A DNA stretch of 64,000 nt, taken from NCBI GenBank assembly GCA_038496445.1, contig JALMLS010000385.1, forward strand, positions 124,001 through 188,000, in the 5' to 3' direction. The notes beneath the pieces are model-generated. The model had not been told where the DNA came from. It did no database searches and saw only the letters and a list, made by a program, of their open reading frames with translations. The stretch comes from Trichosphaerium sp. ATCC 40318 (lineage: Eukaryota > Protista > Tubulinea). This document shows positions 4,685 through 54,908 of the stretch, in pieces. The position numbers and the translations under genes were made by a program. Position 1 is the stretch's first letter. The number at the start of each line of letters is the position of its first letter.

Positions 4685-6486
4685 CTAAATATTAACAAAA
4701 TGTACACCAGAAAGAACTTTCAACCCTTCAGGTGTAACCCTTGTGTTAGCCAGATAGATCTTTTTTACACCAACAATTTCTTTTAACCCTTTATCTGTAA
4801 TGTACCAACAATATGACAGAGATAAGGTATGGACGCCAACAAGTGCTTTTAGCCCTTCATCTGTAACAGATGTGTTCTTTAGAAAGATTGAATGAACGCC
4901 GGAAAGTGCTTTTAATCCTTCATCTGTAACTGAGGTATTAGATAGATGGATAGTATGAACACCAGAAAGTGCTGTTAATCCTTCATCTGTAACTGAGGTA
5001 TTAGATAGATGGATGGTATGTACACCAGAAAGTGCTTTCAATCCTTCATTTGTAACTGATGTATTATTAAGAAAAATAGTATGAACACCAGAAAGTGCTT
5101 TCAATCCTTCATCTGTAATTGAGGTATCATTAAGAGAAATGGTATGTGCGCCAGAAAGTGCTTTTAATCCTTCATCTGTAACCGAGGTATTAGGTAGATA
5201 GATTTTATGTACACCAGAAAGTGCTTTCAATCCTTCATCTGTAACAGATGTGCCACATAGATAGATTGTATGTACACCAGAAAGTGCTTTCAATCCTTCA
5301 TCTGTAACTGAGGTATTAGATAGACGGATTGTATGTACACCAGAAAGTGCTGTTAATCCTTCATCTGTAACTGAGGTATTAGATAGATAGATTGCGTGAA
5401 CGCCAGAAAGTGCTTTCAATCCTTCATCTGTAATTGAGGTATAATTAAGAGAAATGGTATGTACACCAGAAAGTGCTTTCAATCCTTCATCTGTAACAGG
5501 TGTGCGTGATAGAAAGATTGCATGAACGCCAGAAAGCGCTTTTATCCCTTTATCTGTTATATGTTCGCACCTATATAGCTGAACAGAATGAGCACCAGAA
5601 ATGAACTTTAATCCTATATCTGTAACCGAAGCGTAATTAAGAGAAATGGTATGTACGCCAGCAAGTGCCTTTAATCCTTCATCTGTAATTGAGGTATCAT
5701 TAAGAGAAATGGTATGTACGCCAGAAAGTGCTTTCAACCCTTCATCTGTAACTGAGGTAGCATTAAGAGAAATGGTATGTACACCAGAAAGTGCTTGCAA
5801 TCCTCCACCTGTAACCGAGGTAAAATCAAGAGAAATGGTATGTACACCAGAAAGTGCTTTTAATCCTTCATCTGTAACTGAGGTACCATCAAGAAAAATG
5901 GTATGAACACCAGAAAGAGCTTTCAACCCTTCATCTGCAATTGAGGTATCATTAAGAGAAATGGTATGTACACCAGAAAGTGCTTTCAACCCTTCATCTG
6001 TAACTGAGGTAGCATTAAGAGAAATGGTATGTGCGCCAGAAAGTGCTTTTAATCCTTCATCTGTAACCGAGGTAAAATCAAGAGAAATGGTATGTACACC
6101 AGAAAGTGCTTTTAATCCTTCATCAATTAAAGGCTGTCCACATGAGCTAAGAAAAATGTAACGAACACCAGCAAACGCCTTTATAACTTCATTAGATGTT
6201 GCTTTACCAGTAAGTTTGATGCGTGAGTGCTGGAGAGTACTTGAGTGTTTTAAAATTGCTTTTGCTTGGTCAACACTTGAAACGTAAATGCGACAGTATC
6301 CGATAATGTCGTGAATGATAGAGGAAAGGCGACGACAAGTTTGAGAAGCGGCAAAGCGAGATTTTGTTGTTTTACGTAAAATAAGAGCTAAAATCTCTGT
6401 GGGAAGGTCTAAAACGCTTTTCGTATGTTAGAACAGTTTAACAGCTAATTTTGCTCGCACTTTTTGGTTATGCTCTTTTCTGACAT
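4685..6486 (-). CDS. F-box + leucine-rich-repeat protein with about 23 21-aa repeats
   Basis: ATG at 6486, then a 44-nt GT-AG intron (6460-6417, with CTAAC branch motif), giving MSEKSITKNVLDLPTEILALILR (F-box). The frame is open into ORF 4685..5989. Repeat unit GVHTIxLxxTSVTDEGLKALS. Confidence 0.9.
4700..6125. repeat. Coding tandem repeat with 63-bp unit and a 252-bp higher-order duplication
   Basis: CCTTCATCTGTAA recurs at 63-bp spacing (e.g. 4918, 4981). GGTAAAATCAAGAGAAATGG occurs at 5819 and 6071. Confidence 0.95.
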
Positions 6487-7887
6487 CCCACCAAGCTTTA
6501 CAGCGCAAAAGTGTATGGATAATAACTATCAAGCAGAAGCACAAGAGGTCAAATCTTTTTTGTGTAAATTTATTGCGGAGTAGTTCAGAACAACATAGAG
6601 AAAAAACTTCTCATAATTTTCAAAAACACGTGCTCATCAGTGCTTTTTTTTTTGATTCTGAGATTTAGCACGAGTGTTGTTTTATTTCTCGTTCGTTAAG
6701 CACAGTGTAGCACTATGGCTTGTCCATTCTAAGGTGTTTATATTACTCGGTTAGCACACTTAGATTGCTTTATCGAAAGCTTTATAAATTTTTCGATTGG
6801 TTGCATATTCATGCTACAATTGAATAAGTCAAGTGCTCACTACAAATAGCTGTTTTTATTTGACCTCATGACGGTAAATTGTGGCCAATACTCTTTAGTA
6901 CCTACACCAATACCATATTTGTACTAGAGCAGCATAACACAATAATAATGGAAGAGTTAAGATGCTAGGAATAAAGATTCTGATTTGATTCCAACGTTGT
7001 TGGTTAACAATTCCTGCAACGAAAAAAATGAGAAAACAAAATAACTTAGTTGTACTATGCATACCTTGTAGTTCTTCGCAATTCCTCTTGTGCTTGCACA
7101 AGTGATTATTTATACATCCATACTTGGTCTTATCATAGCATATCTCGTGTCCAAGAGCTAAATTGTTGTTCAAGTAAGCAATCGTTTCGTAAAAGAAAAC
7201 AGAGTATGATTGATTGATTGATTTTAGAAGTAGCCGTACGCCCACAAACTATTTGATCTTTTTTACAAACTATACCACTACAGAAATGTGTTTTTCGGGA
7301 ATAGCATCGGGCGTAGGTATCCGCTAAGCATTGATTTAGTATAAAGATTACAACTCTGTATTCATACACCAACACAAAGCCTCTGTTAGTCCGCAATGAG
7401 AGTATCCACGGTAGCACCTTTGCTTTCTAGGATCATAGCACCTACCTTCGCCAGGGAAATACTTTGCTAGATTGTATACAGTGAACAAAAAGAACGATTA
7501 CTACAACAATGCTCTTGTTAAATTCAATTGTAAAACTGCTTAGGAGCACACGTACTTGGATGGCATTTTACAAGTCCATCTTCACATTCTAGAGTTATTA
7601 CCTCTTTAATAAAGAGCGAGACTAAAATTGGCAGGACATAATACCTTAGCATGATCAATTGGAAATAATAACGTCGAGTTTAAATCAATCAAAGTATTCA
7701 CTTAGCTAGACATTTGATAATTAAGTTTTGAATAGTCCCTGGCAAGACATAGGTACTCTTGTCGGGTTTTACATTATTCATAAAACATTACAATGTGGGT
7801 AATCAGATGAGTTCGTGCCAGAAGACACGAAAAGTACAGATAAAACAAACAAGATAACACTTTTTTTTATTTTGTACAAATCGGTTT

Positions 7888-10791
7888 TTACTTGGCTGGC
7901 TGCTTTCTCTTTGCATCAGCTAAGGCATGCCATGCAAGTGTACTCTTTGGTCTATTAGGAACTAAATATTTCTTTTCTAACTTAACAGCATAGCCATGAA
8001 ACTCAGTATCCTAAAAACAAAATCAGTGACTCGTTATTCAGAATTGAAAAAAAAACTGAACACAAGTAAAAAACTTTGCTCAAGAACACCCAATGTAATC
8101 TCAGTAAGTACACTAGTGTATCGAAATATGGGTTTTACAGGGTGAATTATTTAGTAGAGTAGCTGTGGATATAAAGAAAAGAAGAAAGGTATACAACAAG
8201 AACAAAAATAGTGTACCTTTGGATTATATTTTTTGCAATTCTCAACAACCAACTGTAGATCAGCAAAGAATATCTCTTCAGTAATATAAAAATTATTTTC
8301 AAGTCTGGTTCTAATTGTACCCAAATCTAAAGAACATAAGGATGAAAGAAACCTCAACAAAAACCGACAATAAAACAGCAAAAAGTGCAGATGAAAAACA
8401 TTTGAAAAAAAAAAATCAATTCCAAAAAAACAAGCAGCGAGAACAATTTTTTGGTCCCTCACTACAAATAAAATCCCTGTAGAACATATATCGGGTGCAG
8501 AGTATTCACTTATATCTTGATGAATTTTGGTAGGTGATAAGTCGAAAACAAACAAAATTAACAAACAAAATGTCAAAGGTTGTACCCATAGGATTATCAA
8601 TTTTTGATAAGTAGTCATCCACTACAGGCTGTGGTTGTGAGTTAGCTACTGGTTCAAGAAATGGCCAACTTAATGCATTATCTTTTACAATTTTCTAAAC
8701 GAAAAGTAAGTCAGAGGCATGAGATAAAGAAATTTTAAACGTACATCCAAAAGAGTCCTATTTTTAATCTTCAGCAATCGTTGGTTCTCAGGAGCCATCT
8801 GACGTTCATATTCTGTAGAATCCCATCCAGTAGAAACTAGAGTAACCAAGAGAGTTAAAACTTTAAACAAACTAAGAGATACTCACCAATAGAGCTTAAT
8901 CGTTCTGCTCGTATACAAGTATTCTTTAAGCCATTCTCTGTCAATTTCAAACCTAGAAAATTTTAAGAACACCACGTGATCATATTTACTTGTAAGAAAG
9001 AATATTTAGGTTTACTTACCTTGATAAATATTATGCTGTTGACAGTATTGCTTCAAGATATTATACAGTTTCTGAAAAAAAGAGACAATTAGAAACGAAA
9101 GTTTGTTAATCATATTTTTGAGACTTACCATTCGTTGATTCCTTACCCACCGAGGTGCTTCAAGGTAATCTATATTTTTAGCTAACTGACAGTGCATAAG
9201 TGTACTGTTCTCATAATCCTAAAGCGACCATGAGAAAACAAAGAAAAAGATAAACAAAGGTTTCGAAAAGATACAAACCTTAATCTTTCCCTTCCAGATC
9301 TTCTTATCAAGTCTAATCTCCTTTCTAAACCCTTGTTTCTTAAAATAACCAACAGCAAAATCATCAGCATATGTTAATATATGGCCAACATCCCTCTGCT
9401 TTAACTTCTCTTTCAACTGTGACATAGTACGTGTTCCGAAACCCTTACAAAAAATTAGTTAAATCTTTTTTAAGAAACAACTTCATCGTTGCAATAGTGT
9501 GATATCTAAATACCTTTTGACGACATTCTTGTGCTATAGCTAAGAATACAAGTTCACAAAACGGATGCCAAAGTCGGAAAGTACAACCTAATCGAATAAG
9601 AACTGAAAAAAACAAAACTTTTGAAAAACAAAGATGTTTATACATACCACCAATAACCGTTATGTCGTTCTTTAAAATAACCATAGAATGATGGTTTTTA
9701 TCATATATAATCCTTGCAATATAAGCCTTTGGCATATAAGGTAACAGTTTTCCAATAAGTGTCTTTAAATTAGATAACAGCTTAAGTTGTCTAGGCGATC
9801 CATCATTCGTAACAACTTCAAATACAATCTCTCCCGAGTCTTCCATCTCCTTTGCTTTTAAATCACGCTGAGCGAGCTTACTACCCCACTAATAAATGGT
9901 ATTAGATCAACAAAAAGAACAGAGATAAAAAAAAACCCCAATAGCTACACGTGATAACAACGTGACTACAAAACTCCAACAAAAAAAAAAAAAACATGAC
10001 TTCCGATAAACCTTTAAAAAAATAAAGCAAAAGGAAACGCAACGCCCACGAGGCGCCAAGTAATCTACAATTCAACTGACACTTTAAAAAAACGTACAAA
10101 GTCTTCCTTGACAATAGCACAGTCAATTTGCATTGCATCCTGCATGTTAGTATCCTGTACCTCCTCAAGCTCTGCGAATCCTAAGATACAAACAATAAAT
10201 ATCAGAGCAAGTTCGAAATGATGTTAAATGTAAAAATTCAGCCTCGGAGGCGTCGTAAATAATGTATTTGAGTAAACTATGCGGTTTTAACTGGTTTTAA
10301 TAAAGTTGTATGGAAATGCTGTTTACACGTGATTTTTAATGTGTATTTGTAAGCTCTTTGGAGCGTAACGTTAACAGCCAACGAAATTGTAGAGTAAAAT
10401 TAGCCGCTTTTTTTTTTTTTGGGTTGCAATCTACAAAACCCTGTTTATCACGCCTCCCTTACCGTTGAGGTCTCCATGAGCGCTACCAAGTGCAGAGGCT
10501 TCTATGTAGTTGCCTACAGGCAAAGCAAGATCTTTTGTTAAAAACTCACTGCTGTGGTGCTCACTCGAGGATAATTGGTCGTGATTTATAGGTTGGAGGT
10601 CAACCGTTTTGCGTTTGTTGCAAAAAAACTGGTGTTCAAAAGGAGCATCCATCAACGAAGGAGCATTCATTGTTATTGACTTTTTTTGTCGGTAAATACT
10701 TTTTTTTGACTTTTTCAACCGAAAAAAATTAAGGAGATTAATTACCTGAGGAAGGTTGCACTATTTCGCCGTTTGGTGAGTGCATAGCCAT
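7888..10791 (-). CDS. GCN5: GCN5/KAT2-type histone acetyltransferase (GNAT domain + bromodomain); multi-exon
   Basis: Motifs [39 protein letters not shown] and [12 protein letters not shown]. Bromodomain [45 protein letters not shown]. Confidence 0.9.
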
Positions 10792-14572: not shown

Positions 14573-15358
14573 ATGAGCATAATGAAGCAGGTAACAAGCA
14601 ATGAAGAGAAATTAAGTGTAAAATGCGAGCCTTGCCATCTATTCCTCCTTCCAGTCGAGATTCAGCTTGATATTATCGATTTGGACTCATCAATCTATTT
14701 AAAATGGCCTATTCTTTCTAAACAGATGGCTATGACGACAAGGTTTGATAGTGAGATGAATAAGCATGGAAAATGGCAAAGGCGAGGAGGAAACAAAGTT
14801 GTTTCTGAGGAGCGTTGGAACCATGGTTTACAGCATGGAGAGAGTAAAGCTTGGTTTGAAAATGGCCAATTAAAGGTACAATGTAATTACATTGATGGTA
14901 AGCGAGAAGGAGAGTACAGGTACTGGTATAAAAGTGGTCAATTATGGCAACAAATCTTTTATGTCAATGGTATACGTGAAGGAGTGTACAAGAGTTGGTA
15001 CAGAGATGGACAATTGTGGATACAATATAATGTTGTTAATGGTAAACAAGAAGGAGAGTACAAACGTTGGCGTGAAAATGGACGCTTGTGGGTGCAATAC
15101 AGTTTTGTCAATAATAAACGAGAAGGTCAGTATAATTGCTGGTGTGATAATGGCGTATTGGAGGAGCAGTGTAGGTTTATCAATGACAAACGGGAAGGAG
15201 AGAGTAAACAATGGTATGATAATGGTCAATTGAAGTCAGAATGTAATTACATCAATGGTAAGCGAGAAGGAGAGTATCAGAGTTGGTATCGTGATGGCCA
15301 AGTACAGGAATATTGTAATTTTGTCAATGACAGACGAGAGAAGCCTGTAGATGTTTAA
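14573..15358 (+). CDS. F-box + MORN-variant (YwqK-like) repeat protein; intronless
   Basis: LFLLPVEIQLDIIDL F-box-like start, then about 8 repeats of GExKxWYxNGQLxxQxxYxNGKRE. Confidence 0.85.
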   Translation: MSIMKQVTSNEEKLSVKCEPCHLFLLPVEIQLDIIDLDSSIYLKWPILSKQMAMTTRFDSEMNKHGKWQRRGGNKVVSEERWNHGLQHGESKAWFENGQLKVQCNYIDGKREGEYRYWYKSGQLWQQIFYVNGIREGVYKSWYRDGQLWIQYNVVNGKQEGEYKRWRENGRLWVQYSFVNNKREGQYNCWCDNGVLEEQCRFINDKREGESKQWYDNGQLKSECNYINGKREGEYQSWYRDGQVQEYCNFVNDRREKPVDV

Positions 15359-16168
15359 TGAACGAGTTGATTTGTTGCACAGCTTGATACCAAACATTAT
15401 TTGTAATTATTGCTGATAGTAGTATTACTTGGATACTTTGTGTGACTGAGGTACTGTGATAAAAGGTGTTAATACATAAATACAAGGTTGAATATTGTTT
15501 ATTTAAACAATGTTACATGATAAATTACTTCGTAGGTAGCATTATTTTGAAGTGAAGTCAAACACTTAAATCAATTTTTTGTCAATGGAGATAGTTAGGA
15601 TTTGTAAGCATGTACATTCGTAGTATTACATCACCCCTTAAAGTTTATGTAAATTCTTGTGGTGTACTATTTATAAGCTCGGCGTTATTATCATCCCTAC
15701 TATTGTCTTTCATTGAAGAAATCACGTGGCACTTTATTGTTTACGTTTCAGATTTTGACTTTGATTCAAAAAATCACATATTGCACGGCATTGCGGGAAT
15801 TTTGTAACAATTTTTAGCAAAATTCTGAACCCTTTTTCAGACTCTATGTCCCTTTTGTAGAGCAACAAAAAAAGTGCTGTTGTACCTTTTCGTTAGAAAC
15901 AGCAAACTCATAAAATTTTGCAATTTTTGAAATTATCAGTTCTCCATAACATCTATGGATTTGAAGAATCTGGGAGTCTAGTGTATAGAATACCTATTCT
16001 GACAAAGTGCTCTAAAATTGTGTATTTATTTGGCTTTGTAGGTATTCATTAAATGAACATTCTCAACTTGGCGCACTCTTCAACGTTTTGAAAAATTCAG
16101 TGAAAATAGTTTATTGTTGACAGCTCATTATTAACAATCTACTCAACAATCCAAACACAACTATCCGA

Positions 16169-17164
16169 ATGAATACACAACAAACTACCAACCTTCTAGA
16201 GCTACCTACAGAACTCCTAGCAGCAATATTGCTAAACGTATCAAAAGAGCGTTTCACAACAGTTCAGACGTGTAAGCGTCTCGCTAGCATTGTTCATGAC
16301 GTTATCGGATACACAAGTATACGAATACACATAAGAGACTGCCAACGCGTTAGCGGTTACAGCGGTGTTCTCTTGCATACTGTAATAAACGTTAAAAATA
16401 GGCTAGACGTTAATAAAACCACATTGGAGATGAGAAGAAAAGATGCAGCTGAAATGATTCCTTACCTAGCTGGCTCAAAAGTTGTCAACCTCAAGCAATC
16501 AGATATCTCAGATGAAGATATCAAAGAGTTTAATGGCGTTCATACTTTGAATGTAGATCATACATCCATTGAAGGGACATATCTTCACTTGTTCAAAGGA
16601 TTTAGTAGTAGCTGGAGTTTTCTCGTTGATAAGAATCTTTCAGGGCTTGCTGGTGTTCATACAATTAATCTTCAATGTGCCAGGAATATTACAGATGAAG
16701 GCATAAAGTGTTTAGCAGGTGTTCATAGCATTGACCTATCAGGAACACGTGTCACAGATGAAGGAATAAAAGCTCTCGCAGGTGTACACAAGATTTATCT
16801 GACTTGTACAAAGGTCACAGATAGTGGTGTCAAGGCATTAGCGGGTGTTCATACGATTGACTTAGTTGGCACTAAGATAACTGATGAAGGTGTAAAGGCA
16901 TTAAGTGGAGTATATGATATAAGACTATGCTTCTGTACAAATGTGACAAACGAAGGTATTCAGGCACTTGATGATAACTTGAAGGTTATCGGACTTGGGC
17001 AATTGGGTGTAACCGAAGATGTAAAAGATACACTGCGAGAACGAGGAGTGTTTATACATGAACAAGAATACTATGAAGACGACTACCACGAAGGGTCTAC
17101 CTACTTTCACCGTGGTATGGTAACACCTAACCCCATAGGTTTAATGACACGTGATGATTTGTAG
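16169..17164 (+). CDS. F-box + LRR protein; intronless
   Basis: LLELPTELLAAIL..QTCKRL..IVHDVIGY, then GVHTIxL..T.VTDEG.KALA repeats. Confidence 0.9.
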   Translation: MNTQQTTNLLELPTELLAAILLNVSKERFTTVQTCKRLASIVHDVIGYTSIRIHIRDCQRVSGYSGVLLHTVINVKNRLDVNKTTLEMRRKDAAEMIPYLAGSKVVNLKQSDISDEDIKEFNGVHTLNVDHTSIEGTYLHLFKGFSSSWSFLVDKNLSGLAGVHTINLQCARNITDEGIKCLAGVHSIDLSGTRVTDEGIKALAGVHKIYLTCTKVTDSGVKALAGVHTIDLVGTKITDEGVKALSGVYDIRLCFCTNVTNEGIQALDDNLKVIGLGQLGVTEDVKDTLRERGVFIHEQEYYEDDYHEGSTYFHRGMVTPNPIGLMTRDDL

Positions 17165-17345
17165 TACAATAAAAAAAAAAAAGCTGCTAACAATATTGTG
17201 TTAACATCGTTTATTTTTTACAATATCTCTATTTTACTGCTTGTTTTGTTGCTTTTGATACTATTGTTAGGGTTTTAGGATGGCTATGGTACATTTTAAG
17301 GATAGACAAGTTTTAATCTTTCGGTTTCGAGTTCCATGTGATGTT

Positions 17346-18161
17346 CTAGTCGAGAACGATTGGAATTGCATTACACGTGTTTCTCTGAAATGTAGTCGTT
17401 TAGTATTTTGTCTCTTGGTTACTACGTACTGCTTTTATTTTTGGCAACATTCTACGGCGAGCGTTGATGAACCAGTTATTTATTTGAGCATGAGACATAC
17501 CGGTCTAGAGCGATGTTAGAAATACCCAAAACTTAACCAAAAAACCCAGTACCTTCTCGCACAGAGATGCCTTTTGTTCTTCATCAGGGTATGGGTGATC
17601 AACGTGATTTTCAATCCACTATCATTGTAAGTAAGTACATTTTGTATTTGGGGTGTTAGGGGACGTACGATGACAAGGGTGGATCGTACAGATCTGGAGA
17701 AATTTACTCTTTTTCTTTTTTTATTCGAAGGTAAAAGAGAAATCCTTCTTTTCTTTTGAACTGGTTCAACAATGTCATACCCACCCCAATGAATATCTGG
17801 GTGTCCATGACTATAGTCATGCGTATAAGAGAACCTTAGAAATGCACAGTATTGATCAACAAAGTCATCAGCGTTTCTAAAAAGCTCTTCTTGTTGATGA
17901 ACACCTTCTTGTACACAAAGAGATGCGTCCTCAGCAAAAGAAGCTTGTACAACAGGACAAGAGGTTACAAAACGCTCGAATTCCTACATTGGTTAAGAAC
18001 ACGTGATAGTAGAATGGCGTAAGGGTACATACGTTACGGCTTTGTCTACGGCGCTTTTTAGAAGTTTTTGAAGTAAACGACACTCCAGTTGTTGAACTCG
18101 TATGAATAGAAGTATAAAGTTTACGAGCTACTTCATCAGATGTATTAGCTGTTGTTGCCAT
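17346..18161 (-). CDS. TALE-class homeodomain transcription factor; multi-exon, homeodomain not visible in the ORF track
   Basis: Spliced translation KRKRVNFSRSVRSTLVI|WIENHVDHPYPDEEQKASLCEK|TGMSHAQINNWFINARRRMLPK contains the PYP loop extension and WFINARRR helix 3. The last exon is tentative. Confidence 0.88.
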
Positions 18162-18997
18162 GGTTGTAATGAGAAATAATGGTTGTTTTAAGTTTCCTTT
18201 TTGGGTTTTTTTTAAACAGGCCAAAAACGGACTTTTAAATACCAAGTCGAGTTCTGTTCGCGTAGGCTTTTACGAAAATAACGGCGAATACGAATACAGC
18301 ATTTTGTAATAAAAACGGTTTTTGTCAACTGTTTCGTTTTATCTCGCTTTCTATACCTATGGCGCATCAAAGGACAAAGTTTTCACCTCATTCGAGTACA
18401 ATCGATACCATATGCCTAATTTAGCAAAACCTCAACTTTGGCGTTAGTAAGCGTTGTAAAGTATCCAAACTATTGCCTTTATTGCCCTGCCTGGCCCATT
18501 GAGAAGGAACATAACAACGTTTTAATTTCAGTACCAGAATAAAAAATACCGGAATGTTATCCCGGCCGGTGGTTTGTAAAAATGTTTGTTCCGGGGGCCA
18601 TCCGAACGGTAAAGAAAAACACAGTTGGAAGAAAAAATTGTAAGTTTTACTAATACGTTTGTACTGATACCGTTTAATTAGGATCATTCCTTTTTGGGAC
18701 TACTTTTTAATTATTTCTTTCGCCGCTGTAGTGAGTTTGTGCTATGTTTGATATACCCTATCGCTGGCGTGCAGCTTACTCAACAATTATTAAGCCCTTA
18801 CACCACAACTAAAACCACGACAAACGCTGTAGTAGGTTAAGTAGTTAACCCTACAGCAAAACACTTGTTTACACGTGTTCAACAAAGTCATGCTTGGCAC
18901 ATCCTCATTTTTATTTGTCAAAGAAATAGTATGGTACACAGTATCTACATCAGTATATCAGAAGATGACTTCACATCTCAAAGGTCAAACTGAGAGA

Positions 18998-19858
18998 CTA
19001 ATATCTCTTTATCTCTGATGCACCAGTTAATGCCAATACTTCCCTGTCATCTGTTATTTCTCCAATAGACATGCGAATAGTATGTACGCCTGAAAGAGAC
19101 TGTAATCCTGCAGCCGTAATTGTTTTGCAACATATCAAGCTAATAGTATGTACACCCACTAATGATGCCAACCCGTTATCTGTTACCTTTGTATCTGATA
19201 AATTAATGTCATATACGCCCGCCAGCGCTTTGATTCCCTCATCTGTTATCATCTTACAGGCACAAAGTACAATTGTATGTACACCTGCCAACGCCTTCAA
19301 ACCTTCATCTGTTACTCTTGTACCAGATAAATCAATCTTATGTACACCTGCCAACGCCTTGATGCCCTTATCTGTAATTGCTTTGCAGGCACACAATACA
19401 ATAGTGTGCACACCAGCCAACACTTCCAACTCTTCATCTATTACATCTGTGTATTCTAAGTTTATCTCATGTACACCTGCCAATGTATTGATACCATTGG
19501 TTGTAATTGATTGATATCGCAGGTCAATTGTATGTACACCTTTAAGTAAATTCAAGTGGTTATCATTTGTTGTAAACCCGTTTTTAAAAGATATACACGT
19601 GTTCTGGAGTAACGGACTACCAGAGAGGAGCTGAATGTCATTCTCGCTCGAAACACAGATTTTACCATATCCAACATGGTTGCGAACAATATCTCGCAAC
19701 AGGTGGCATGTTTGGGCTGAAGGGAGTGTAGATTGCAAATGTTTTACGATGTGAACTATTAGTTCAACTGGAAGTTTAACAAGGTTGAACAAGTCTTGAT
19801 TATCTGTCATTACAATAATTAGTAGGTTTGTATTGTCGTTAGTTTTACAAGTCCACAC
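18998..19858 (-). CDS. F-box + LRR protein; intronless, ATG start probably near 19810
   Basis: LVKLPVELIVHIV..SAQTCHLLRDIV..VGY..LSGSPLLQNT, then GVHTIxL repeats. Confidence 0.9.
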   Translation of the reverse strand: MWTCKTNDNTNLLIIVMTDNQDLFNLVKLPVELIVHIVKHLQSTLPSAQTCHLLRDIVRNHVGYGKICVSSENDIQLLSGSPLLQNTCISFKNGFTTNDNHLNLLKGVHTIDLRYQSITTNGINTLAGVHEINLEYTDVIDEELEVLAGVHTIVLCACKAITDKGIKALAGVHKIDLSGTRVTDEGLKALAGVHTIVLCACKMITDEGIKALAGVYDINLSDTKVTDNGLASLVGVHTISLICCKTITAAGLQSLSGVHTIRMSIGEITDDREVLALTGASEIKRY

Positions 19859-29543: not shown

Positions 29544-30665
29544 CTATTTTTTCGTTGACCAGTATAACAAAGAAGTATTAAAGATGCTGGTAAAGTATCT
29601 GTACCAAGCACTAAAAATACTTCCCATCACATTCAAAGGAAATAAACCAGAGCTATTAGAAGTGAAGTCTATTAATCCAAAATGGTTCTCTCCATTGTTA
29701 TGTTGTACTACGACATGTGCCCCAAACCATTCACTCACCTCATCATCTACTCCACTGTTAACAAAATCTTTCGGTTCTCCGTTCTCATGCCACTCTTGAA
29801 GCTCACCAACTTGTGTGTGATTAAGCCATGTGCTTTTTCTCTTCAGCTGTCCATTCTCATACCATTCGTTACATTCACCATTTATTTCACCTTTAACCCA
29901 CGTGCTTTGTTCCATTATCTGCCCGTTTTCATGCCAAACTTTACAATAACCGTTTTGTTTACCGTTTCGCCACATACTCTCTGCCTCAAGTTGTCCACTT
30001 TGATACCATTCTTTTTGTACACCATCTCGTTTTCCATTGACCTTCATGCCTTGTTGTTTAATTTGTCCGTTCTTAAACCACTCTTTATATTCACCATTCG
30101 CTTTATCATCAGCCCACATACTATACACCTTAAGTTGTCCACTCTCATACCATACTTTACAATCACCACTTTGTTTGCCATTTACAAACATGGCTTTCCT
30201 CATTAGTTTTCCGCTCTCATACCATTCTAAACATTCACCATTGTGTTTGTTATGAAGTAATGTTGACTTTGATTTAAGCATACCACTTTCATACCATACC
30301 TTATACTGTCCATCTTGTTTACCATTAACAAACATACCTTGTAATTTAAGCTCTCCATTCTCATGCCATTGCTTAAACTCACCATGTCGTTTACAATTAA
30401 CAAACATACTTTTTGATCTGATTTGACCACTCTTGTACCATGTTATTCTTGGCCCATTCTTTGCGTATTGATGAGAACAAACTGTTCCATTTTTATACCA
30501 TCTTATCCACTTTCCAGAACGCTCAAGGTTTTCATCAAAATGAGTGTTTAATGCTGCTCTCTTTGATAGTGTATGATATTTTGTGAATACTTCAACATTG
30601 AATGTGCAAATATACTGTTGTATTTCACGTGGGATATCCAACAGAGTCAAACATGATAATGACAT
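29544..30665 (-). CDS. F-box + MORN-variant repeat protein; intronless
   Basis: LLDIPREIQQYI..LSKRAALNTHFDE..SGKWIRW, then about 10 GExxxWYESGQL repeats. Confidence 0.88.
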   Translation of the reverse strand: MSLSCLTLLDIPREIQQYICTFNVEVFTKYHTLSKRAALNTHFDENLERSGKWIRWYKNGTVCSHQYAKNGPRITWYKSGQIRSKSMFVNCKRHGEFKQWHENGELKLQGMFVNGKQDGQYKVWYESGMLKSKSTLLHNKHNGECLEWYESGKLMRKAMFVNGKQSGDCKVWYESGQLKVYSMWADDKANGEYKEWFKNGQIKQQGMKVNGKRDGVQKEWYQSGQLEAESMWRNGKQNGYCKVWHENGQIMEQSTWVKGEINGECNEWYENGQLKRKSTWLNHTQVGELQEWHENGEPKDFVNSGVDDEVSEWFGAHVVVQHNNGENHFGLIDFTSNSSGLFPLNVMGSIFSAWYRYFTSIFNTSLLYWSTKK

Positions 30666-41153: not shown

Positions 41154-41551
41154 GTTCATGTATAAAATTCCACTTTCTGTTGGGAAGAAAATGTAACCTA
41201 GTTGTTGGATCTATCACCTGATAAAGCAAAGAATACATCTCCAGTACTTAGAAGTATGTGCTCTAACAATTTATGTGCCACACAAGAGAAGCAGTTTGTG
41301 TACAGGAAAAGTTGTGTACAATAAGTAGATGAACATCTTTATTTGTTAACATACCAGATACTGATCCGAGAGATAGGACATTTTATGAACCAGCTGATCA
41401 CGTAGTACTGTTAACACAAGGAAGGCTGTAAAAATCAATTCAGAAAATGAAAAAAAAGAAGAAAATCCAGCGTTACATTGTGCGCTGTGTAGGGATTATT
41501 GAGTAGATATGTTGTGTACTTTAACAAAAAGATATGATCTCCTGTCAATGA

Positions 41552-41775
41552 CCCATTGTCTAAGTGCCACTCTTCGGCTTCACCGTGCTTCTCACCGTGT
41601 TGCCACTGTACACTTTGGTTTCGAACCATATCTGGTCCTTTTTGTATATATCGCAGCTAGTTACCGTGCTTAGCAAATTGCTCATCAAAGCGCTCATTTG
41701 TTGAACAAAAGAGATGGAAAATCTTGTACCAGTAAGTCAAATAAAGTAAAACCAGCACGTTTCTTGGTTCTTCTT
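41552..41775 (-). pseudogene. F-box + MORN-variant pseudogene fragment
   Basis: RFDEQFAKHGN*LRY...WQHGEKHGEAEEWHLDNG matches RFDSEMNKHGKW...WNHGLQHGESKAWFENG of the 14573 gene. The conserved Trp codon is TAG here. Confidence 0.75.
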
Positions 41776-42236
41776 TTTATGCAAACAAATAAGCCTGTGC
41801 CATACCTAGATACTATCGTATGAGTAGAACACAAGTGTTTAGCATACCAGGCATTATATTGGATTGATCTGTAATGCTCTGAGCATCGCTTTTGAGACAG
41901 TTTCAAAATTCCGACATTTTACTTTTAAAAAATTACTTTAACTGTCGGTACATTTCCTCGGCACAGCATAAACGAATCGTAAAATGGCTTTTACTCCTAT
42001 AATAAAGGAAACCGGAAATATCTATTATAACTGTATAATTACTATCACGTGCAAATAAACTTCAGTGTTTTTATAGGCGAGCGGAGCAAAGGATTCATCT
42101 AAACCTTTATTGTTTGGTTATACAGTTGGTGAGCTTTGTTTTAACCCTTGTGGGTTTGCACATGTGTTGTTTTTAGTTTGTGATAATAAACAATCAGTTG
42201 ATTGTTATTGCTTCAAAAGACACATACGTCTGCTTA

Positions 42237-43196
42237 TCACCAATATAGTACTGTTGTGCCCTCATCTTGGAGTAATTTTATACCTCTAGATATATGTTTA
42301 CAACCATATAGTTTTAGCACTTTAACACTACCACCAGATAGATGAAAAATCCATTTACTTGTAGCTTTTGTAAGTGATAAATCAATTTCATGTGCACTTG
42401 CAATATATTCCATGCATGCTATTGTTATATGAGAACATTGTGCAAGGTTAATTGTATGTACACCAACCAAGGCTGAAACACCTTTATCTGTAACTGACGT
42501 TTTCTTCAGGGATATACTATGTACACCTGCCAATGCTGAAATGCCCCTATCTGTTATATGCCTATTCTCATCGAGATTGATAGTATGTACTCCTGATAAA
42601 GAACATAATACATAATCTGTAGTCTTATGCGATTTAGGTAAACTAATGTTTGGTATTCCAGCAAGCGCCTTCAAACCCATCTCAGTCACTCCATAAACAT
42701 TGTACAAACTAATAGACTTGAGATTCTTCACAAGCGGTTTTAAACCTGCATCTGTTATTGAACAACACTGTATTTCCAAGTGACGAACACCACTAATAGA
42801 CTTCATTCCTGAGTCTGTTATACAAAAATTTGTGTAAAGTTGAAGAGATTGTACTCCAGAAAGAAGAGCAAGATCTTTATCTGTTGCACCTCTGAATCTA
42901 CTTAACGAAATTCTTGTGTTTTTCAGAAGTGGGCTACCAGAAAGATAAGAACAAGATTCAGTTGATCGAGGATAAATAAAGTCGTATCCAATGTGATAAT
43001 GAATGACATTTAATAGTCGTTTACAGCTCTCAGAAACAGAAAATCTATCATAACGTCCAACCAGTTTGAGTAAATGAGCCAATATCTCTGTAGGTATATC
43101 CAATAGCTCTGTAGTACTAATTTTGTGCGTATCGCACTCAATTAGAGCCAATCGTTTGAAATTATGTTCTTTATTGGAGTCACGTGTTGAAAACAT
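42237..43196 (-). CDS. F-box + LRR protein; intronless
   Basis: LLDIPTEILAHLL..SESCKRL..IHYHIGY..LSGSPLLKNTRISL, then GVHxIxL repeats. Confidence 0.9.
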   Translation of the reverse strand: MFSTRDSNKEHNFKRLALIECDTHKISTTELLDIPTEILAHLLKLVGRYDRFSVSESCKRLLNVIHYHIGYDFIYPRSTESCSYLSGSPLLKNTRISLSRFRGATDKDLALLSGVQSLQLYTNFCITDSGMKSISGVRHLEIQCCSITDAGLKPLVKNLKSISLYNVYGVTEMGLKALAGIPNISLPKSHKTTDYVLCSLSGVHTINLDENRHITDRGISALAGVHSISLKKTSVTDKGVSALVGVHTINLAQCSHITIACMEYIASAHEIDLSLTKATSKWIFHLSGGSVKVLKLYGCKHISRGIKLLQDEGTTVLYW

Positions 43197-47253: not shown

Positions 47254-47435
47254 CTTAACCTTTTTGGATTTTTTCAACTTATGTTTTGTCAATGTCCTTT
47301 TCTTTCTTCCTAATTAAGACAATTTTTAACAGTCGGAATCAGTTTTTGCGCACGCGTAGTTGCAGGTGGCTACGCCAGGCTTAGTCTCACAATTGCGTGC
47401 CACTTAAAAAAACTGAATAAGTAAGATTAATTAGC

Positions 47436-50733: not shown

Positions 50734-51465
50734 ATGAAAAGTAAACGCACCAGTCAGCATACAGTCGATCTTAATAAGCTCCCAGTTGAAACAATAGTTC
50801 ATATTCTCAAACAAGCAAAGTTTACGCTTCTTTTGGCGCAAACATGCCATCTCATGCATAATATTGTCCATAACAAGGTAGGATATGGACATATCCACCT
50901 TCGAAACGAGTCTGAATTGAAAATCCTTTCTGGTAGTCCCTTACTTCAGAATACACGCATTACCCTCGCAACTGATTTTGATGTAAAAGACTATCACTTG
51001 CGCTTACTTGCAGGTGTACACACCATAAATTTGGAGTTTTGCTTTGACATAACCAACAGGGGACTAGCAGCATTGAAGGGTGTACATGAAATCCATTTGA
51101 TAGGTTGTGAAGAGATAACAGATTTATCAGCACTTGCTGGAGTACACACAATTTATTTGACTCAAATGACTGTATTTGATGAAGATTTGGAATCTTTGGC
51201 AGGTGTACACACTATCGACTTGGCTTGTAGTGTTCAAGATATAACAGATGAGGGTATAGAGGAATTGGCAGGTGTACATACCATAAATTTAGAAGATTCT
51301 AGAGTAACAGATCAAGGCCTGATGGCCTTGGCTGGTGTACATACTATTTATTTAGATGATTGTGGACTTGCTTCCTCTCGCAAATTAAAAAGCAGCTGCA
51401 CTCCGATCAGATGTAATACATCAACAGACGCAAGGTCACATCGTTCTCTTACATGCCATAAATAA
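50734..51465 (+). CDS. F-box + LRR protein; intronless, C-terminus possibly truncated
   Basis: LNKLPVETIVHIL..AQTCHLM..VGY..LSGSPLLQNTRI, then GVHTIxL repeats that end abruptly. Confidence 0.85.
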   Translation: MKSKRTSQHTVDLNKLPVETIVHILKQAKFTLLLAQTCHLMHNIVHNKVGYGHIHLRNESELKILSGSPLLQNTRITLATDFDVKDYHLRLLAGVHTINLEFCFDITNRGLAALKGVHEIHLIGCEEITDLSALAGVHTIYLTQMTVFDEDLESLAGVHTIDLACSVQDITDEGIEELAGVHTINLEDSRVTDQGLMALAGVHTIYLDDCGLASSRKLKSSCTPIRCNTSTDARSHRSLTCHK

Positions 51466-51762
51466 AAACGACACTGTTCATTTACAACTGAATTGTTATT
51501 TGATATTTCACCGGATAAACAAAATGTACACGTGACTTAAAAATAACGTTTTCTTTTACCGGTTGTAATGTAGTTGTAAGTGGATTTATGGCGGTAGAAG
51601 TTAAGGCATTGGTGGTGCCGGAAAATCCGCGGAAACCGGCCTTACCTTTCGCTAAGGTAGGTTAGTAAATCTTGACTTATTCTAAAAAATCCCTCGGAAT
51701 ACGCGAGTACGGTGGTTCTTTTTAAGGAACCAAAAAATCATATCTACGAGGATTTCTCATCA

Positions 51763-52617
51763 ATGGCAACACTCTACTACTTGCCAGTCTCAGGTCCAAG
51801 CCGCATTGCTCATATGGCAGCATTAGCTACGAAAGCAAAAGTAAAACTCCACGTGCGCTAAATCACTTGTGATTTTCGAAAGTTAATTGTTCTAAGATTG
51901 TTGATTTGGTTAATAAAGCCAATAAAGAACCAGAGTACCTAGCAATAAATCCACTGAGTAAGATACCTGCTATGAAAAATGAAGATGGTACAATTGTTTG
52001 CGACTCAGCTGCAATAGCAAGGTAAAACATAGTTGTAGTGTAATGCCAGTAACCCTTTTTTACAGATACCTGTCTATTAAATACTCGTCTTCTCTCTATC
52101 CTGTTAGTGATCTTGCAGCGCTTGCAAAGGTACAAACTACTTACCTCGTCAAATGAATCATATTAACTATACTCCTTTTCAGGTTGACAGTGTCTTCGAA
52201 TCAGTTAGAAATGATGTGTTTCAAACGTGTTTGCAATATGGCTTGCATAAAATTGTTCTACCGGATATCCTTAAACACGGTCCTCGAGATGATGCCAAGG
52301 TAGCAGCGCTTGATGCTCAAGTAACCTCGGAAGTAAGCACCCTATATGGCACAAGGCAAAACACTAACTTGTTACAATAGCTTGAGTTCTACAACAAGAA
52401 CTACTTCAAGGAATCTCATTGGCTTGTTGGAAAGAATATGACAATCGCTGATATCGTACTGTCTGTAGGGTTATCACAGCTCTTGGTATTTGGAAAATAC
52501 GAAAAAGATCTGCCTGACAAGGTAGCACAATTCTATGAAGCTGTTCAACAAGAGCCTACATTCGTAGCTGCTCATGAACCTTTCCATGACGTGCTCAAGA
52601 AAATGGGTTTAGCTTAA
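51763..52617 (+). CDS. Glutathione S-transferase (theta-like); multi-exon
   Basis: MATLYYLPVSGPSR, EYLAINPLSKIPAM, CDSAAIARYL, WLVGKNMTIADI. Confidence 0.92.
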
Positions 52618-52853
52618 ACCTCAACTGTGTTCTCAAGATACAATGCAACTAAATAAACATCTTCAATCTCGTACTATTACTTGACGTGTAAAATTATTAC
52701 ATCTTTTTAAAACGTTAAGCGTGACTTGGGAGAAGTAACTATCGTGAGCTGCATTAACAAAAAACAATGTTGGTGTTTAACATCGCGTTCCAAACAACCT
52801 CACAAAATCTGAAATTGTAACCTCTTTATTGGATGCTTACATTACTTTTTTGA

Positions 52854-53619
52854 CTAGTCTTTCTTTGTTCAAGGATACTATCAGGGTAGCATAGTCTTGG
52901 AACCTAAAAATTCGGGGTAAGTAAAAAAATTACACGTGATTTGACGCAAGCATGTGTGTACCTTGAAATCACTTTTTCTTGGTCCAAAGAATTGATTTTT
53001 AATTGAATACGACCTTGTGATAACACTGTCATCCATTTTGTTTTCATATTCGTAAGACTCAAGCTTTCCGCTATCAGAGACAGTAGCAGTTATGGTTATA
53101 TTCGTAGGGAAACCAGGTGAAGGTGCACATGCTAGAGTATACTTGTTTCCGCTTACACTTGGTTCATCACATCTAAGACCATATTGACCTTCGAAGCTTG
53201 AACAATAAGGCCAAGAAACAGCATAAGGATAGACGCAGAAATCTATGTCGTGTGGACCCTTTTTTGGTTATTAGATTGTTTCAACAGTTGTATCGTGAAC
53301 GCTTATGCGTTTGACATACCTTAGGCGGTGCTTGATAGTAAATAAAGTGCTCTCCTGAATCTTCTTCCTCAAAATGCTCCCAGCTCACTGTTCTGTTCTT
53401 TTCTGGCTCTCTTATGTACATATAATGACCTTTACGCGATGATACGCTTGATTTGCCTGTTTTTATGTCTAGAATTGTAGTCTTTTCCGTGTAGCGTATA
53501 TTAGAGGTTTCAATGGCTGTCACAGGGTCCAAATGAAAGGTTGGCGTAAATTGTTGGTAGAACGCATTAGCGCATGCAACTGCCAGCACGAAAGTGAAAG
53601 TAAAGAGTAGCTTTGTCAT
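52854..53619 (-). CDS. Secreted beta-rich protein, possibly ependymin-related; three exons
   Basis: Signal peptide, in-phase GT-AG introns, and a C-terminal DFKVP..C. The family assignment is tentative. Confidence 0.55.
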
Positions 53620-54164
53620 CAGGTCTGGCGCGCAACTTTGAGCCTCTTTTAGTAAAAGTGGCCTTTTTCAGGAAAAGTACTCCTTTTCTATTGAAATTTT
53701 CCGTTTTCGATAAATAAGGTTAGTTGTTATCCATATTTTGATCTCGATTTCTTGTTCATTACTTTGAGTATGTCGTTCTTATGGCATCAACCAGTACATA
53801 GCGTCCTTATATGTGAAAAAGAGGTAGTGGTTGGAAAGAAACTAAAACTGATGTAGTTCGAACGACTTACACAAAAACGGAAGACTGAGATTACGGTCGA
53901 ACGACTTCAGTTTTTTCGCTTGACTCGTTTTGAAAAAATTACGCAAAATTCACCTGAGAACCTAGAAAATAAGTAGAGAGTTTGTACCCAGCGGACTAAA
54001 ACTATTTTTTATTGAAAGACAATTTTGACATGAATCAGCATTTAAGCGAACGTTGTCAAACTGCTACTTTACCATCAATCCAAATTGCAACAAGCTTTCA
54101 TGCACAGCGCTTATAAAGAACATTTAAACCAGAGTTTTGAATATGTTATACCTCTTGAAGTATT

Positions 54165-54908
54165 CTACTGTACTAATGTACCATCTCTACGCCAAAACTT
54201 ATTCTCCCCCTTTTGTATTCCGTTTACAAAGTTTTTCTCTCTCTTCATATTACCTTTTCTATACCACTGTCGAAAGGTTCCATGTAGTTTACCTTTATAA
54301 TAATGACTTTTCTCATACACTGAACCAACAACATCTTTATATCCTTTAAACCACTCTGTGACCTCTCCTTCAAGTTCATTGTTTAAAAAGTAACATTGTT
54401 GACTTATGGAACCATTACTATAATATCTCTTTCTTTCTCCTTGCTTGGCACCATTAACATAGTTACAAACCTCTTTTGGTTTACCACTACTATGCCATAA
54501 GTTAAACTCTCCATGTCGTTTACCACTTACATAACAACATGTCTCACGCAATTGTCCATCAACCCACATATTATACTCTCCTTCTTGTTTACCATCAGCG
54601 TAGTGATACTGTTCCCTTTGTTGACCATTACTATACCAACAGTTTCGTTCTCCATCAAGTTTACCATGTGTATAAGTACATTGTTCTGTTATTTGACCTG
54701 TTTTGCTTTGTTTAATCCATTTACCGTGCCTTTTCATGTCTACGTCAAACTTCGTTGTTGTTGCTGTGTGTTTAGATAGGAGAGACCATTTTGTTTTAAC
54801 GTTGTAGTCTAGATCGATAATATCAAGGTGTAATTCCAATGGGAGGTTTAGGATTAGCGCGGGAAGCTGTGTTTCAGAGGAACAAGTTTGTTTTAATGTA
54901 GTCATCAC
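54165..54908 (-). CDS. F-box + MORN-variant repeat protein; intronless
   Basis: ILNLPLELHLDIIDL..KWSLLSK..TKFD..MKRHGKW, then GExxxWYSNG repeats. Confidence 0.88.
   Translation of the reverse strand: MMTTLKQTCSSETQLPALILNLPLELHLDIIDLDYNVKTKWSLLSKHTATTTKFDVDMKRHGKWIKQSKTGQITEQCTYTHGKLDGERNCWYSNGQQREQYHYADGKQEGEYNMWVDGQLRETCCYVSGKRHGEFNLWHSSGKPKEVCNYVNGAKQGERKRYYSNGSISQQCYFLNNELEGEVTEWFKGYKDVVGSVYEKSHYYKGKLHGTFRQWYRKGNMKREKNFVNGIQKGENKFWRRDGTLVQ

What the first reader, a model, noticed from the sequence alone, without database searches (positions are those of the whole stretch)
4685..54908. Dispersed, nearly intronless F-box repertoire with two interchangeable repeat scaffolds (nine loci in 64 kb)
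Seen: five F-box+LRR genes (4685, 16169, 18998, 42237, 50734), three F-box+MORN-variant genes (14573, 29544, 54165) and one dead copy (41552). They sit singly, on both strands, between intron-rich housekeeping genes. Only one short 5' intron occurs among them. Each family has its own linker (xTCxxLxxIxxxxxGY, often followed by LSGSPLLxNT; LSK..TxFD..HGKW) and a different repeat number per copy. An A12 run follows the 17164 stop. Established: F-box proteins are SCF substrate adaptors, and F-box fused to repeat domains is common in amoeba-infecting giant viruses and intracellular bacteria. Inference: this is a birth-and-death repertoire of ubiquitin-targeting receptors, spread by retroposition or acquired from viruses, and possibly a cell-autonomous defence system.
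Basis: partly seen in the sequence, partly recalled or inferred. Interest (0 to 1): 0.8.

Follow-up and report, generated by a model that had tools for sequence, protein, structure and literature searches.

The report
Amoeba's huge F-box receptor gene families
Eight intact genes and one faint remnant here belong to two gene families, each probably about a thousand strong, in what is very probably the marine amoeba Trichosphaerium; each joins a ubiquitin-ligase docking head to a variable repeat array, so they are probably target-recognition proteins, but the expansion is partly published and nothing here shows an immune role.

Summary
The eight open reading frames are real. Five are F-box + LRR genes and three have an F-box-like head + MORN_2 repeats. 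The ninth locus is only a weak remnant.

The genome matches the published Trichosphaerium sp. draft. That paper already names F-box and MORN as the commonest domains among about 1,570 "giant-virus-derived" genes. This scan has also reported the same families on other pieces of this genome.

New here:
- **Two different heads.** The LRR head matches Pfam F-box-like in 23 of 23 paralogs. The MORN head matches no F-box model, but its confident AlphaFold model hits almost only F-box domains from Skp1 complexes, at low Z. The scaffolds are therefore not interchangeable.
- **MORN head restricted.** It was found in only 51 cluster representatives among 1.84 billion. The ten I traced were nine MMETSP transcripts and one JGI contig. 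It was not found in viral contigs.
- **Family size.** Each head has about 1,100-1,200 candidate sites genome-wide.
- **Selection.** Heads are under purifying selection (dN/dS 0.25-0.33). A few repeat positions are hypervariable.
- **Not retroposition.** Young copies share upstream flanks, a third of sampled MORN paralogs keep one 5' intron position, and the A12 run is within chance.

Viral origin is unresolved and a defence role is untested.

The parts
4685..6486 (-). F-box + LRR gene. Main exon 4685-6416, with 22 LRR anchors (the largest array in the window) and the F-box starting at about 6406. Putative 44-nt intron 6417-6460. Putative first exon 6461-6486 carrying the ATG.
   Evidence: LRR_6 scores 144.7 bits. 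There is no in-frame ATG upstream of the F-box. The splice model is read from the sequence only; the exons were not joined.
14573..15358 (+). F-box-like head + MORN_2 repeat gene, 261 aa, 8 repeat anchors, single exon.
   Evidence: (MORN_2 100.7 bits).
16169..17164 (+). F-box + LRR gene, 331 aa, 6 LRR anchors, with an irregular middle and an acidic tail. An A12 run follows the stop.
   Evidence: (LRR_6 58.3 bits; F-box-like E 0.0038).
18998..19810 (-). F-box + LRR gene, 270 aa counted from the ATG at 19810, 8 LRR anchors, with the LSGSPLLQNT motif.
   Evidence: (head scores 23.4 bits to PF12937, cut-off 24.3).
29544..30665 (-). Divergent F-box-like head + MORN_2 gene, 373 aa, 11 repeat anchors, with a non-repeat C-terminal tail.
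   Evidence: (MORN_2 134 bits).
41435..41760 (-). Decayed remnant of a MORN-family gene: the head's C-terminal half plus one MORN-like unit, interrupted by a stop. No helix 1 is left.
   Evidence: 10.9 bits to the head HMM. tblastn does not detect it. Weak.
42237..43196 (-). F-box + LRR gene, 319 aa, belonging to a separate subfamily with irregular repeats.
   Evidence: F-box 20.1 bits, cut-off 20.5; 87 paralog matches at E <= 1e-40, 41-62% identical, 83 without internal stops; groups with transcripts P0122 and P0126.
50734..51465 (+). F-box + LRR gene, 243 aa, 6 LRR anchors, with a non-repeat C-terminal tail that may be degenerate.
   Evidence: (LRR_6 21.5 bits, just under the 23.4 cut-off).
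54165..54905 (-). F-box-like head + MORN_2 gene, 246 aa counted from the ATG at 54905, 4 regular repeat anchors.
   Evidence: MORN_2 52.6 bits; identical to library protein P0203.

Best explanation
The window holds ordinary members of two separate, lineage-specific, massively expanded gene families of an amoeba that is very probably Trichosphaerium sp.

Each protein has a small N-terminal helical head. In the LRR family this is a recognisable F-box. In the MORN_2 family it is a cryptic F-box-like fold. I infer that the head docks on Skp1 in an SCF ubiquitin ligase.

Behind the head is a repeat array: LRR units of 21 or 22 residues, or MORN_2 units of 24 residues. Copy number varies between genes, and a few exposed positions per unit are hypervariable. 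I infer that the array binds the protein to be ubiquitinated.

The families grew by DNA-level duplication, both segmental and local. Flanks and, where present, a 5' intron were copied along. Divergence, truncation and decay followed.

Shown here: domain content, family size (as first-look candidates, 150 scored per family), constraint on the heads, variability of the repeats, shared flanks and the conserved intron position. Inferred: Skp1 binding, ubiquitination of targets, and any biological role.
For: - **Genome identity.** 70.28 Mb in 642 contigs, with windows at 35-39% GC, against the published 70.87 Mb, 710 scaffolds and 37.69% GC. One homolog is labelled MMETSP0405 'Tricho...'.
- **Repeats.** LRR_6 and MORN_2 are above or at Pfam's cut-off.
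- **LRR head.** 23 of 23 paralog heads hit PF12937 F-box-like (best E 6.6e-8) and 16 of 23 hit PF00646.
- **MORN head.** The AlphaFold2 model has pLDDT 84.3. Against 48,161 PDB representatives, 11 of the top 12 hits and about half of all 36 hits are F-box domains in Skp1 complexes: Cdc4, Fbw7, FBXL17, cyclin F, FBXL5, Legionella AnkB, FBXL2 and others, at Z 3.0-3.6 over 40-52 aligned residues. A low-confidence helical model of similar size gave no such enrichment.
- **Skp1.** Skp1 genes are present in the genome.
- **Family size.** 1,200 and 1,118 first-look candidates for the two heads. All 150 scored in each reach E <= 1e-17. PF12937 itself gives 1,809 candidates.
- **Constraint on the heads.** Median pairwise dN/dS is 0.25 (LRR) and 0.33 (MORN) at dS of about 0.9. 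Nearly all listed LRR paralogs at 41-65% identity keep open frames.
- **Variable surfaces.** LRR positions 4, 6, 8, 9, 11 (and 12 in the 22-mer) have 2.3-3.4 bits of entropy in at least one of the two unit types, and pN/pS 0.4-2.0, against below 0.3 for most scaffold positions. MORN_2 shows a similar but weaker pattern.
- **DNA duplication.** L043 and L054 are 91.6% identical over 2,372 bp, including about 1.3 kb upstream of the ATG. Other pairs share 220-350 bp upstream. At least 10 of 30 MORN paralog loci share a short first exon and a GTA...TAG intron at one position.
- **Transcription.** Nine of the ten MORN-head representatives I traced are MMETSP transcripts.
Against: - No sequence model sees an F-box in the MORN head: 0 of 26 and 1 of 46 members. 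Profile searches against PDB sequences gave nothing.
- The fold matches are at Z of only 3.0-3.6, and Foldseek found none.
- The window's own LRR genes are all below Pfam's F-box cut-offs.
- Skp1 binding could not be tested. The complex job gave no verdict.
- Family sizes rest on unscored first-look candidates; only 150 per family were scored.
- The per-position pN/pS compares non-orthologous, partly saturated repeat units, so it is crude.
- No expression data were available for these particular genes.
Confidence: 0.6

Rival explanations
1. The genes came from giant viruses by lateral transfer and then multiplied in the host. This is the published reading. It concerns origin and is compatible with the receptor function.
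For: - PMC10521059 lists F-box and MORN as the commonest domains among about 1,570 gene models with giant-virus best hits. Its tables name Indivirus 'F-box domain protein', Harvfovirus, Hyperionvirus and Pacmanvirus 'MORN repeat protein'.
- The non-amoebal repeat relatives I traced lie on giant-virus-like contigs. P0127 sits beside Rpb2 and Rpb5. P0003 sits in a DUF5758-MORN_2 triplet with Evr1_Alr.
Against: - Only the repeats are shared. The MORN head was found in 51 of 1.84 billion representatives; the ten traced were nine MMETSP transcripts and one JGI contig.
- Neither head was found in IMG/VR by pattern scan.
- The viral DUF5758 head gave no match in this genome, though that search's controls did not ring either.
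- In a rough tree, the one LRR protein from a verified viral-type contig falls outside the amoebal clade, with bacterial-type LRRs.
- Hundreds to thousands of host copies against a few per virus fit host-to-virus capture equally well.
- Best-hit methods cannot give direction.
Confidence: 0.3
2. The MORN-family head is not an F-box but a family-specific helical domain with another job, such as membrane or partner tethering. On this reading the MORN family has nothing to do with ubiquitination.
For: - No F-box model or profile matches it.
- hhalign against the LRR-family F-box aligns only 16 columns.
- Structural Z scores are low.
- The complex test gave no verdict.
Against: - The hit list of a confident model is dominated by F-box domains aligned exactly at their Skp1-binding region, out of 48,161 chains.
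- The head keeps the LPxE-I helix-1 signature and an LL(S/C)K motif where F-boxes carry VCK.
- It is N-terminal and followed by a repeat array, which is the canonical F-box protein layout.
Confidence: 0.3
3. The copies were spread by retroposition: processed mRNA copies inserted around the genome.
For: The eight window genes are single-exon or nearly so, and are scattered on both strands among intron-split genes. One A12 run follows a stop codon.
Against: - The A12 begins 7 nt after the stop. It is the only such run among 8 genes, and the window has 9 comparable homopolymer runs.
- Young duplicates share upstream non-coding flanks of up to 1.3 kb.
- At least 10 of 30 MORN paralogs keep a 5' intron at one position.
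- The published table lists F-box models with 1-6 introns.
- Some members lie in local clusters on single contigs, such as C183, C200 and C120.
Confidence: 0.05
4. The repertoire is a cell-autonomous defence system that tags proteins of giant viruses or intracellular bacteria for degradation.
For: - The families are large, with conserved heads and hypervariable repeat positions.
- Related repeats occur in giant viruses.
- From my own knowledge, not checked here: the same idea has been proposed for the expanded F-box families of nematodes and plants.
Against: - There are no data on targets, on induction by infection, or on association with other defence genes.
- The same pattern fits any diversified housekeeping receptor set, or relaxed constraint.
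- Subfamilies are shared with the MMETSP transcripts, so turnover is not extreme.
Confidence: 0.1

Closest known systems
FBXL-type F-box/LRR proteins (Skp2, FBXL2, FBXL5, FBXL17, yeast Grr1)
   Same: An N-terminal F-box is followed by short LRR units carrying an (I/V)TDxG(L/I)xxL motif. Pfam LRR_6 matches, and library homologs carry precomputed LRR_FBXL15 hits. Variable residues flank the beta-strand.
   Different: The units are 21 or 22 residues with a GVHT(I)xL core. The F-box is divergent and below Pfam cut-offs in the window copies. Copy number is in the hundreds to about a thousand, against tens in animals and fungi (the comparison figure is from my own knowledge).
Expanded F-box superfamilies of nematodes and plants, described as birth-and-death evolution with a conserved F-box and fast-evolving substrate domains (from my own knowledge, not read here)
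   Same: A very large family with a conserved head, variable target-binding part, fragments and pseudogenes.
   Different: A different lineage (Amoebozoa) and different substrate domains. MORN_2 in particular I did not find described as an F-box partner in one keyword search.
Giant-virus repeat proteins: DUF5758-MORN_2 proteins and F-box or LRR proteins of Mimiviridae/Klosneuvirinae
   Same: MORN_2 and ITDEG-type LRR units are 35-45% identical to the amoebal ones. They are the published best hits.
   Different: Viral MORN_2 proteins carry a DUF5758 head, which gave no match in this genome. The amoebal heads were not found in viral contigs.
F-box/BTB expansions in amoeba-associated Parachlamydiaceae (PMC4209131, listed, not read) and the Legionella effector AnkB
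   Same: An F-box fused to repeat domains in organisms living with amoebae. The AnkB F-box is among the structural hits and the weak sequence hits.
   Different: Those are bacterial effectors that hijack the host SCF. These are nuclear genes of the amoeba itself, some with spliceosomal introns.

Membership tests
F-box proteins (SCF substrate receptors): LRR family | An F-box domain recognised by curated sequence models | tested here: met
   23 of 23 paralog heads hit PF12937 (best E 6.6e-8) and 16 of 23 hit PF00646. The five window copies are individually just under the cut-offs, for example 20.1 bits against 20.5 and 23.4 against 24.3.
F-box proteins (SCF substrate receptors): MORN_2 family | An F-box domain recognised by curated sequence models | tested here: not met
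   0 of 26 and 1 of 46 heads match any Pfam F-box model. Profile searches against PDB sequences found none. hhalign against the LRR-family head aligns helix 1 only.
F-box proteins (SCF substrate receptors): MORN_2 family | The F-box fold: a small helical cluster as seen bound to Skp1 | tested here: inconclusive
   The model has pLDDT 84.3. 11 of the top 12 and about half of all 36 VIA hits are F-box domains in Skp1 complexes, but at Z of only 3.0-3.6. Foldseek found none.
F-box proteins (both families) | Binds Skp1 | not testable with these tools
   Skp1 is present but split by introns. Its exons were supplied as separate chains and the complex job returned no verdict.
F-box proteins (both families) | N-terminal head followed by a protein-interaction repeat domain | tested here: met
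Processed retrocopies | A 3' poly(A) remnant, similarity ending at the transcript ends, and loss of the parent gene's introns | tested here: not met
   no tails; shared upstream flanks; conserved 5' intron in at least 10 of 30 paralogs. Target-site duplications were not searched for.
Giant-virus MORN_2 proteins | A DUF5758 (PF19062) N-terminal domain preceding MORN_2 repeats | tested here: not met
   The window genes have a different head. PF19062 gave no match in the genome, but that search's controls did not ring either, so absence is not proven.
Diversifying receptor repertoires | A conserved scaffold with a few hypervariable, solvent-exposed positions and variable repeat number | tested here: met
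   entropy and crude pN/pS per repeat position; conserved heads. This shows a pattern only. It does not show function or positive selection in the strict sense.

The most novel reading that the evidence does not exclude
The amoeba runs roughly two thousand germline-encoded SCF receptors, on LRR and MORN_2 scaffolds, as an intracellular immune repertoire against giant viruses and bacterial symbionts. The related viral repeat proteins would be captured host copies used as decoys. This would be a ubiquitin-based counterpart of animal and plant LRR immunity in Amoebozoa.
Probability: 0.1. Interest if true: 0.85.

Novelty: new variant of a known kind. Interest (0 to 1): 0.4.

Why it matters
If both heads dock on Skp1, this amoeba may carry one of the largest F-box receptor sets known. 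It would also use MORN_2 repeats as a substrate-binding scaffold, which I did not find described.

The result also bears on a published claim. About 1,570 Trichosphaerium genes were counted as transfers from giant viruses, mostly F-box and MORN proteins. Here only the repeats resemble the viral proteins I traced. The MORN head was not found outside MMETSP and JGI records, and the copies multiply as host DNA. So much of that 'unprecedented gene trafficking' could be one or a few old events followed by host expansion, or host-to-virus capture.

For this window alone the finding is ordinary. It samples a genome-wide background that this scan has reported several times.

Tried and rejected
- **Complex prediction** (Skp1 middle exon, Skp1 C-terminal exon and the MORN head as three chains): no verdict, score 0.01 against a mark of 0.34, and the alignment was not used. 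It counts neither for nor against binding.
- **Foldseek** of the MORN-head model against PDB: no match.
- **Profile searches of both heads against PDB sequences:** only non-significant hits. For the LRR head the top hits were the FBXO31 F-box (E 0.23) and, third, the AnkB F-box (E 1.2). For the MORN head there were only spurious brazzein hits.
- **hhalign between the two heads:** helix 1 only.
- **AlphaFold model of the LRR head:** low confidence (pLDDT 67.4), and its structural hits were random helical proteins. I used it only as a contrast.
- **IMG/VR scans** with head alignments and with whole proteins: no relatives. These scans are pattern-based, so absence is weak evidence.
- **Third homolog search**, restricted to the LRR head: only 3 word-sharing candidates and none significant. 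This reflects the word index, not absence.
- **Contexts of P0128 and P0123:** the contigs are too short to say what organism they come from.
- **Quick tree of LRR proteins:** the careful search did not finish, branches are long and composition is biased, so the direction of any transfer stays unresolved.
- **P0122 as a one-to-one ortholog of the 42237 gene:** rejected. That gene has 87 in-genome paralog matches at E <= 1e-40, many of them equally or more similar.
- **A fixed MORN-LRR two-gene cassette:** the three adjacencies in the window have three different orientations. In a genome sample only 3 of 29 MORN loci and 1 of 30 LRR loci had the other family within about 1.5 kb.

Spliced products were not assembled. 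Exons 1 and 2 of the 4685 gene and the three Skp1 exons were handled exon by exon, by reference.


Full report
**What is in the window**

The window is eukaryotic. GC is 35-39%, only 19 ORFs reach 150 aa in 64 kb, and recognisable genes appear as short ORF pieces. Examples are a bromodomain gene, a RING-IBR ligase and a canonical MORN protein.

Pfam gives:
- LRR_6 above its cut-off in four of the five LRR genes, and just below in 50734.
- MORN_2 above its cut-off in all three MORN genes.
- F-box models only below cut-off in the LRR genes, at E 6e-4 to 0.05.
- No F-box match at all in the MORN genes.

The 4685 gene has no in-frame ATG before its F-box. An ATG at 6486, followed by a 44-nt GT...AG stretch (6460-6417), would supply one.

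The 'dead copy' is a faint remnant at about 41435-41760(-). It scores 10.9 bits to a family HMM and is missed by tblastn.

**Which genome**

The assembly has 70.28 Mb in 642 contigs. The published Trichosphaerium sp. draft has 70.87 Mb, 710 scaffolds and 37.69% GC (PMC10521059). One homolog is labelled MMETSP0405 'Tricho...'.

Earlier notes of this scan gave me this lead. I checked it against the paper. That paper already reports F-box and MORN as the commonest domains among about 1,570 gene models assigned to giant-virus transfer. Its tables list best hits such as 'F-box domain protein [Indivirus ILV1]' and 'MORN repeat protein [Pacmanvirus]', some with 1-6 introns and some marked as expressed.

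The scan has also reported these families on other pieces of this genome.

**Family size**

I searched the genome with the heads alone:
- The 70-aa MORN-family head gives 1,200 first-look candidates.
- The 75-aa LRR-family head gives 1,118.
- All 150 scored in each case reach E <= 1e-17.
- PF12937 itself gives 1,809 candidates, and all 150 scored are over its cut-off.

So 150 per family is a firm lower bound, and about a thousand each is plausible. At that density about two copies are expected per 64 kb. Eight is a moderate excess, not a special locus.

The window's copies are only 29-49% identical to each other. Their best paralogs elsewhere are 56-65% identical. They are old, dispersed members and not a local burst.

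**Are the heads F-boxes?**

For the LRR family the answer is yes at family level. 23 of 23 paralog heads hit PF12937 (best E 6.6e-8) and 16 of 23 hit PF00646.

For the MORN family sequence methods fail:
- 0 of 26 paralog heads match any F-box model.
- 1 of 46 heads matches in a more diverse set that includes transcripts.
- Profile searches against PDB sequences gave nothing.
- hhalign against the LRR head aligns only helix 1 (16 columns, probability 39%).

An AlphaFold2 model built from the 46-sequence alignment is confident, at pLDDT 84.3 with four short helices. Foldseek found nothing.

An exhaustive VIA-align pass over 48,161 PDB representatives returned 36 chains at Z >= 2. Eleven of the top twelve, and about half overall, are F-box proteins aligned at their F-box in Skp1 complexes. 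They include Cdc4, Fbw7, FBXL17, cyclin F, FBXL5, AnkB, FBXL2, FBH1, FBXL10, FBXO3 and beta-TrCP, at Z 3.0-3.6.

The Z values are low in absolute terms. A comparable small helical model, the low-confidence LRR head, gave only unrelated helical proteins. The enrichment is therefore meaningful. I read the MORN head as a cryptic F-box-like fold, with about 65% confidence.

Skp1 genes exist but are intron-split. A complex job with two Skp1 exons as separate chains gave no verdict.

The two heads are distinct families. The 'two interchangeable scaffolds on one F-box' picture is not supported.

**Distribution outside the genome**

An exhaustive HMM search with the MORN head in 1.84 billion cluster representatives found 51 proteins. 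Nearly all carry the head near the N-terminus, followed by MORN_2-type repeats. Of the ten I traced, nine are MMETSP transcripts and one is a JGI contig.

Whole-protein searches find many bacterial and viral MORN_2 proteins, but these share only the repeats. The virus-type ones carry a DUF5758 head, which gave no match in this genome.

The closest non-amoebal repeat relatives I traced sit on giant-virus-like contigs. One lies next to Rpb2 and Rpb5. The other lies in a DUF5758-MORN_2 triplet with Evr1_Alr.

Neither amoebal head was found in IMG/VR, though that scan is pattern-based.

A rough tree puts the amoebal LRR genes and the MMETSP transcripts together, with subfamilies shared between them. 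For example, 42237 groups with P0122 and P0126 at 99% support. The one LRR protein from a verified viral-type contig falls outside, with bacterial-type LRRs. The direction of any transfer is unresolved.

**How the copies spread**

Only one of the eight genes has an A-run of 7 or more within 300 nt after its stop. That A12 starts 7 nt after the stop, and the window has nine homopolymer runs of 11 or more.

Younger paralogs elsewhere share non-coding flanks. L043 and L054 are 91.6% identical over 2,372 bp, including about 1.3 kb upstream of the ATG. Other pairs share 220-350 bp upstream.

At least 10 of 30 sampled MORN paralogs have the same layout: a short first exon of about 8-24 codons (most often about 10), a GTA...TAG intron of about 50 nt, then the head.

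Several members cluster on single contigs. This is DNA-level duplication, not retroposition.

**Selection**

Pairwise dN/dS over the heads has a median of 0.25 (LRR) and 0.33 (MORN) at dS of about 0.9. Nearly all listed LRR paralogs at 41-65% identity keep open frames.

Within repeats:
- The LRR unit is 21 or 22 residues. Most scaffold positions have pN/pS below 0.3. Positions 4, 6, 8, 9, 11 (and 12 in the 22-mer) have 2.3-3.4 bits of entropy in at least one unit type, and pN/pS 0.4-2.0.
- The MORN_2 unit is 24 residues and shows a weaker version of the same pattern.

These ratios compare non-orthologous units and are crude. They fit a conserved docking head with a diversified binding surface.

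**Verdict**

The 'ubiquitin-receptor repertoire with birth and death' reading is the best supported. Retroposition is rejected, viral origin is open, and defence is speculation. The families are partly published and have been seen repeatedly in this scan. What goes beyond the literature I could find is the cryptic F-box-like head on MORN_2 arrays and its restriction to MMETSP and JGI records.

Noticed in passing
window 14573-19858; 41435-43196; 50734-54908: MORN-family and LRR-family genes lie next to each other three times, in three different orientations: tandem with MORN first, tandem with LRR first, and convergent. In a genome sample, only 3 of 29 MORN loci and 1 of 30 LRR loci had the other family within about 1.5 kb. 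This is mild co-clustering, not a fixed cassette.
   Followed up: partly
L009, L010, L011, L012, L013, L016, L021, L028, L030, L034 (about 1400-1560 in each locus): About a third of sampled MORN-family paralogs share a short first exon (often M-L-x-S-P-N-x-I-x-Y-K) and a GTA...TAG intron of about 50 nt immediately before the head. The rest start with an ATG in the same exon as the head. This implies intron gain or loss within the family.
   Followed up: partly
window 38708-39589 (+): A canonical MORN protein (PF02493, 144 bits) with a non-repeat C-terminal part. It belongs to a different family from the MORN_2 genes. Further MORN-like ORF pieces lie at 59150-61424 (-).
   Followed up: partly
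window 31855-32865 (+): A RING plus IBR (RBR-type) E3 ubiquitin ligase split into at least two ORF pieces, lying among the F-box genes.
   Followed up: no
window 8151-9846 (-): An intron-split gene with a bromodomain. By eye, an acetyltransferase-like piece lies upstream, but Pfam found nothing in it at E <= 0.001. It may be GCN5-like.
   Followed up: no
window 62063-63154 (-): A 363-aa ORF with a signal-peptide-like start, a Cys-rich N-terminal third and a long A/G/I/K-rich region. It has no Pfam match.
   Followed up: no
window 19071-19514 (+), 29682-30206 (+), 38749-39417 (-): Long antisense ORFs run inside the repeat arrays. They are most likely by-products of repeat composition, not genes.
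   Followed up: no
L014/L015, L039/L040, L046/L047/L048 (other contigs of G000): Several paralog loci on different contigs encode identical proteins. They could be uncollapsed haplotypes or very recent duplications. Either way they inflate raw copy counts.
   Followed up: no
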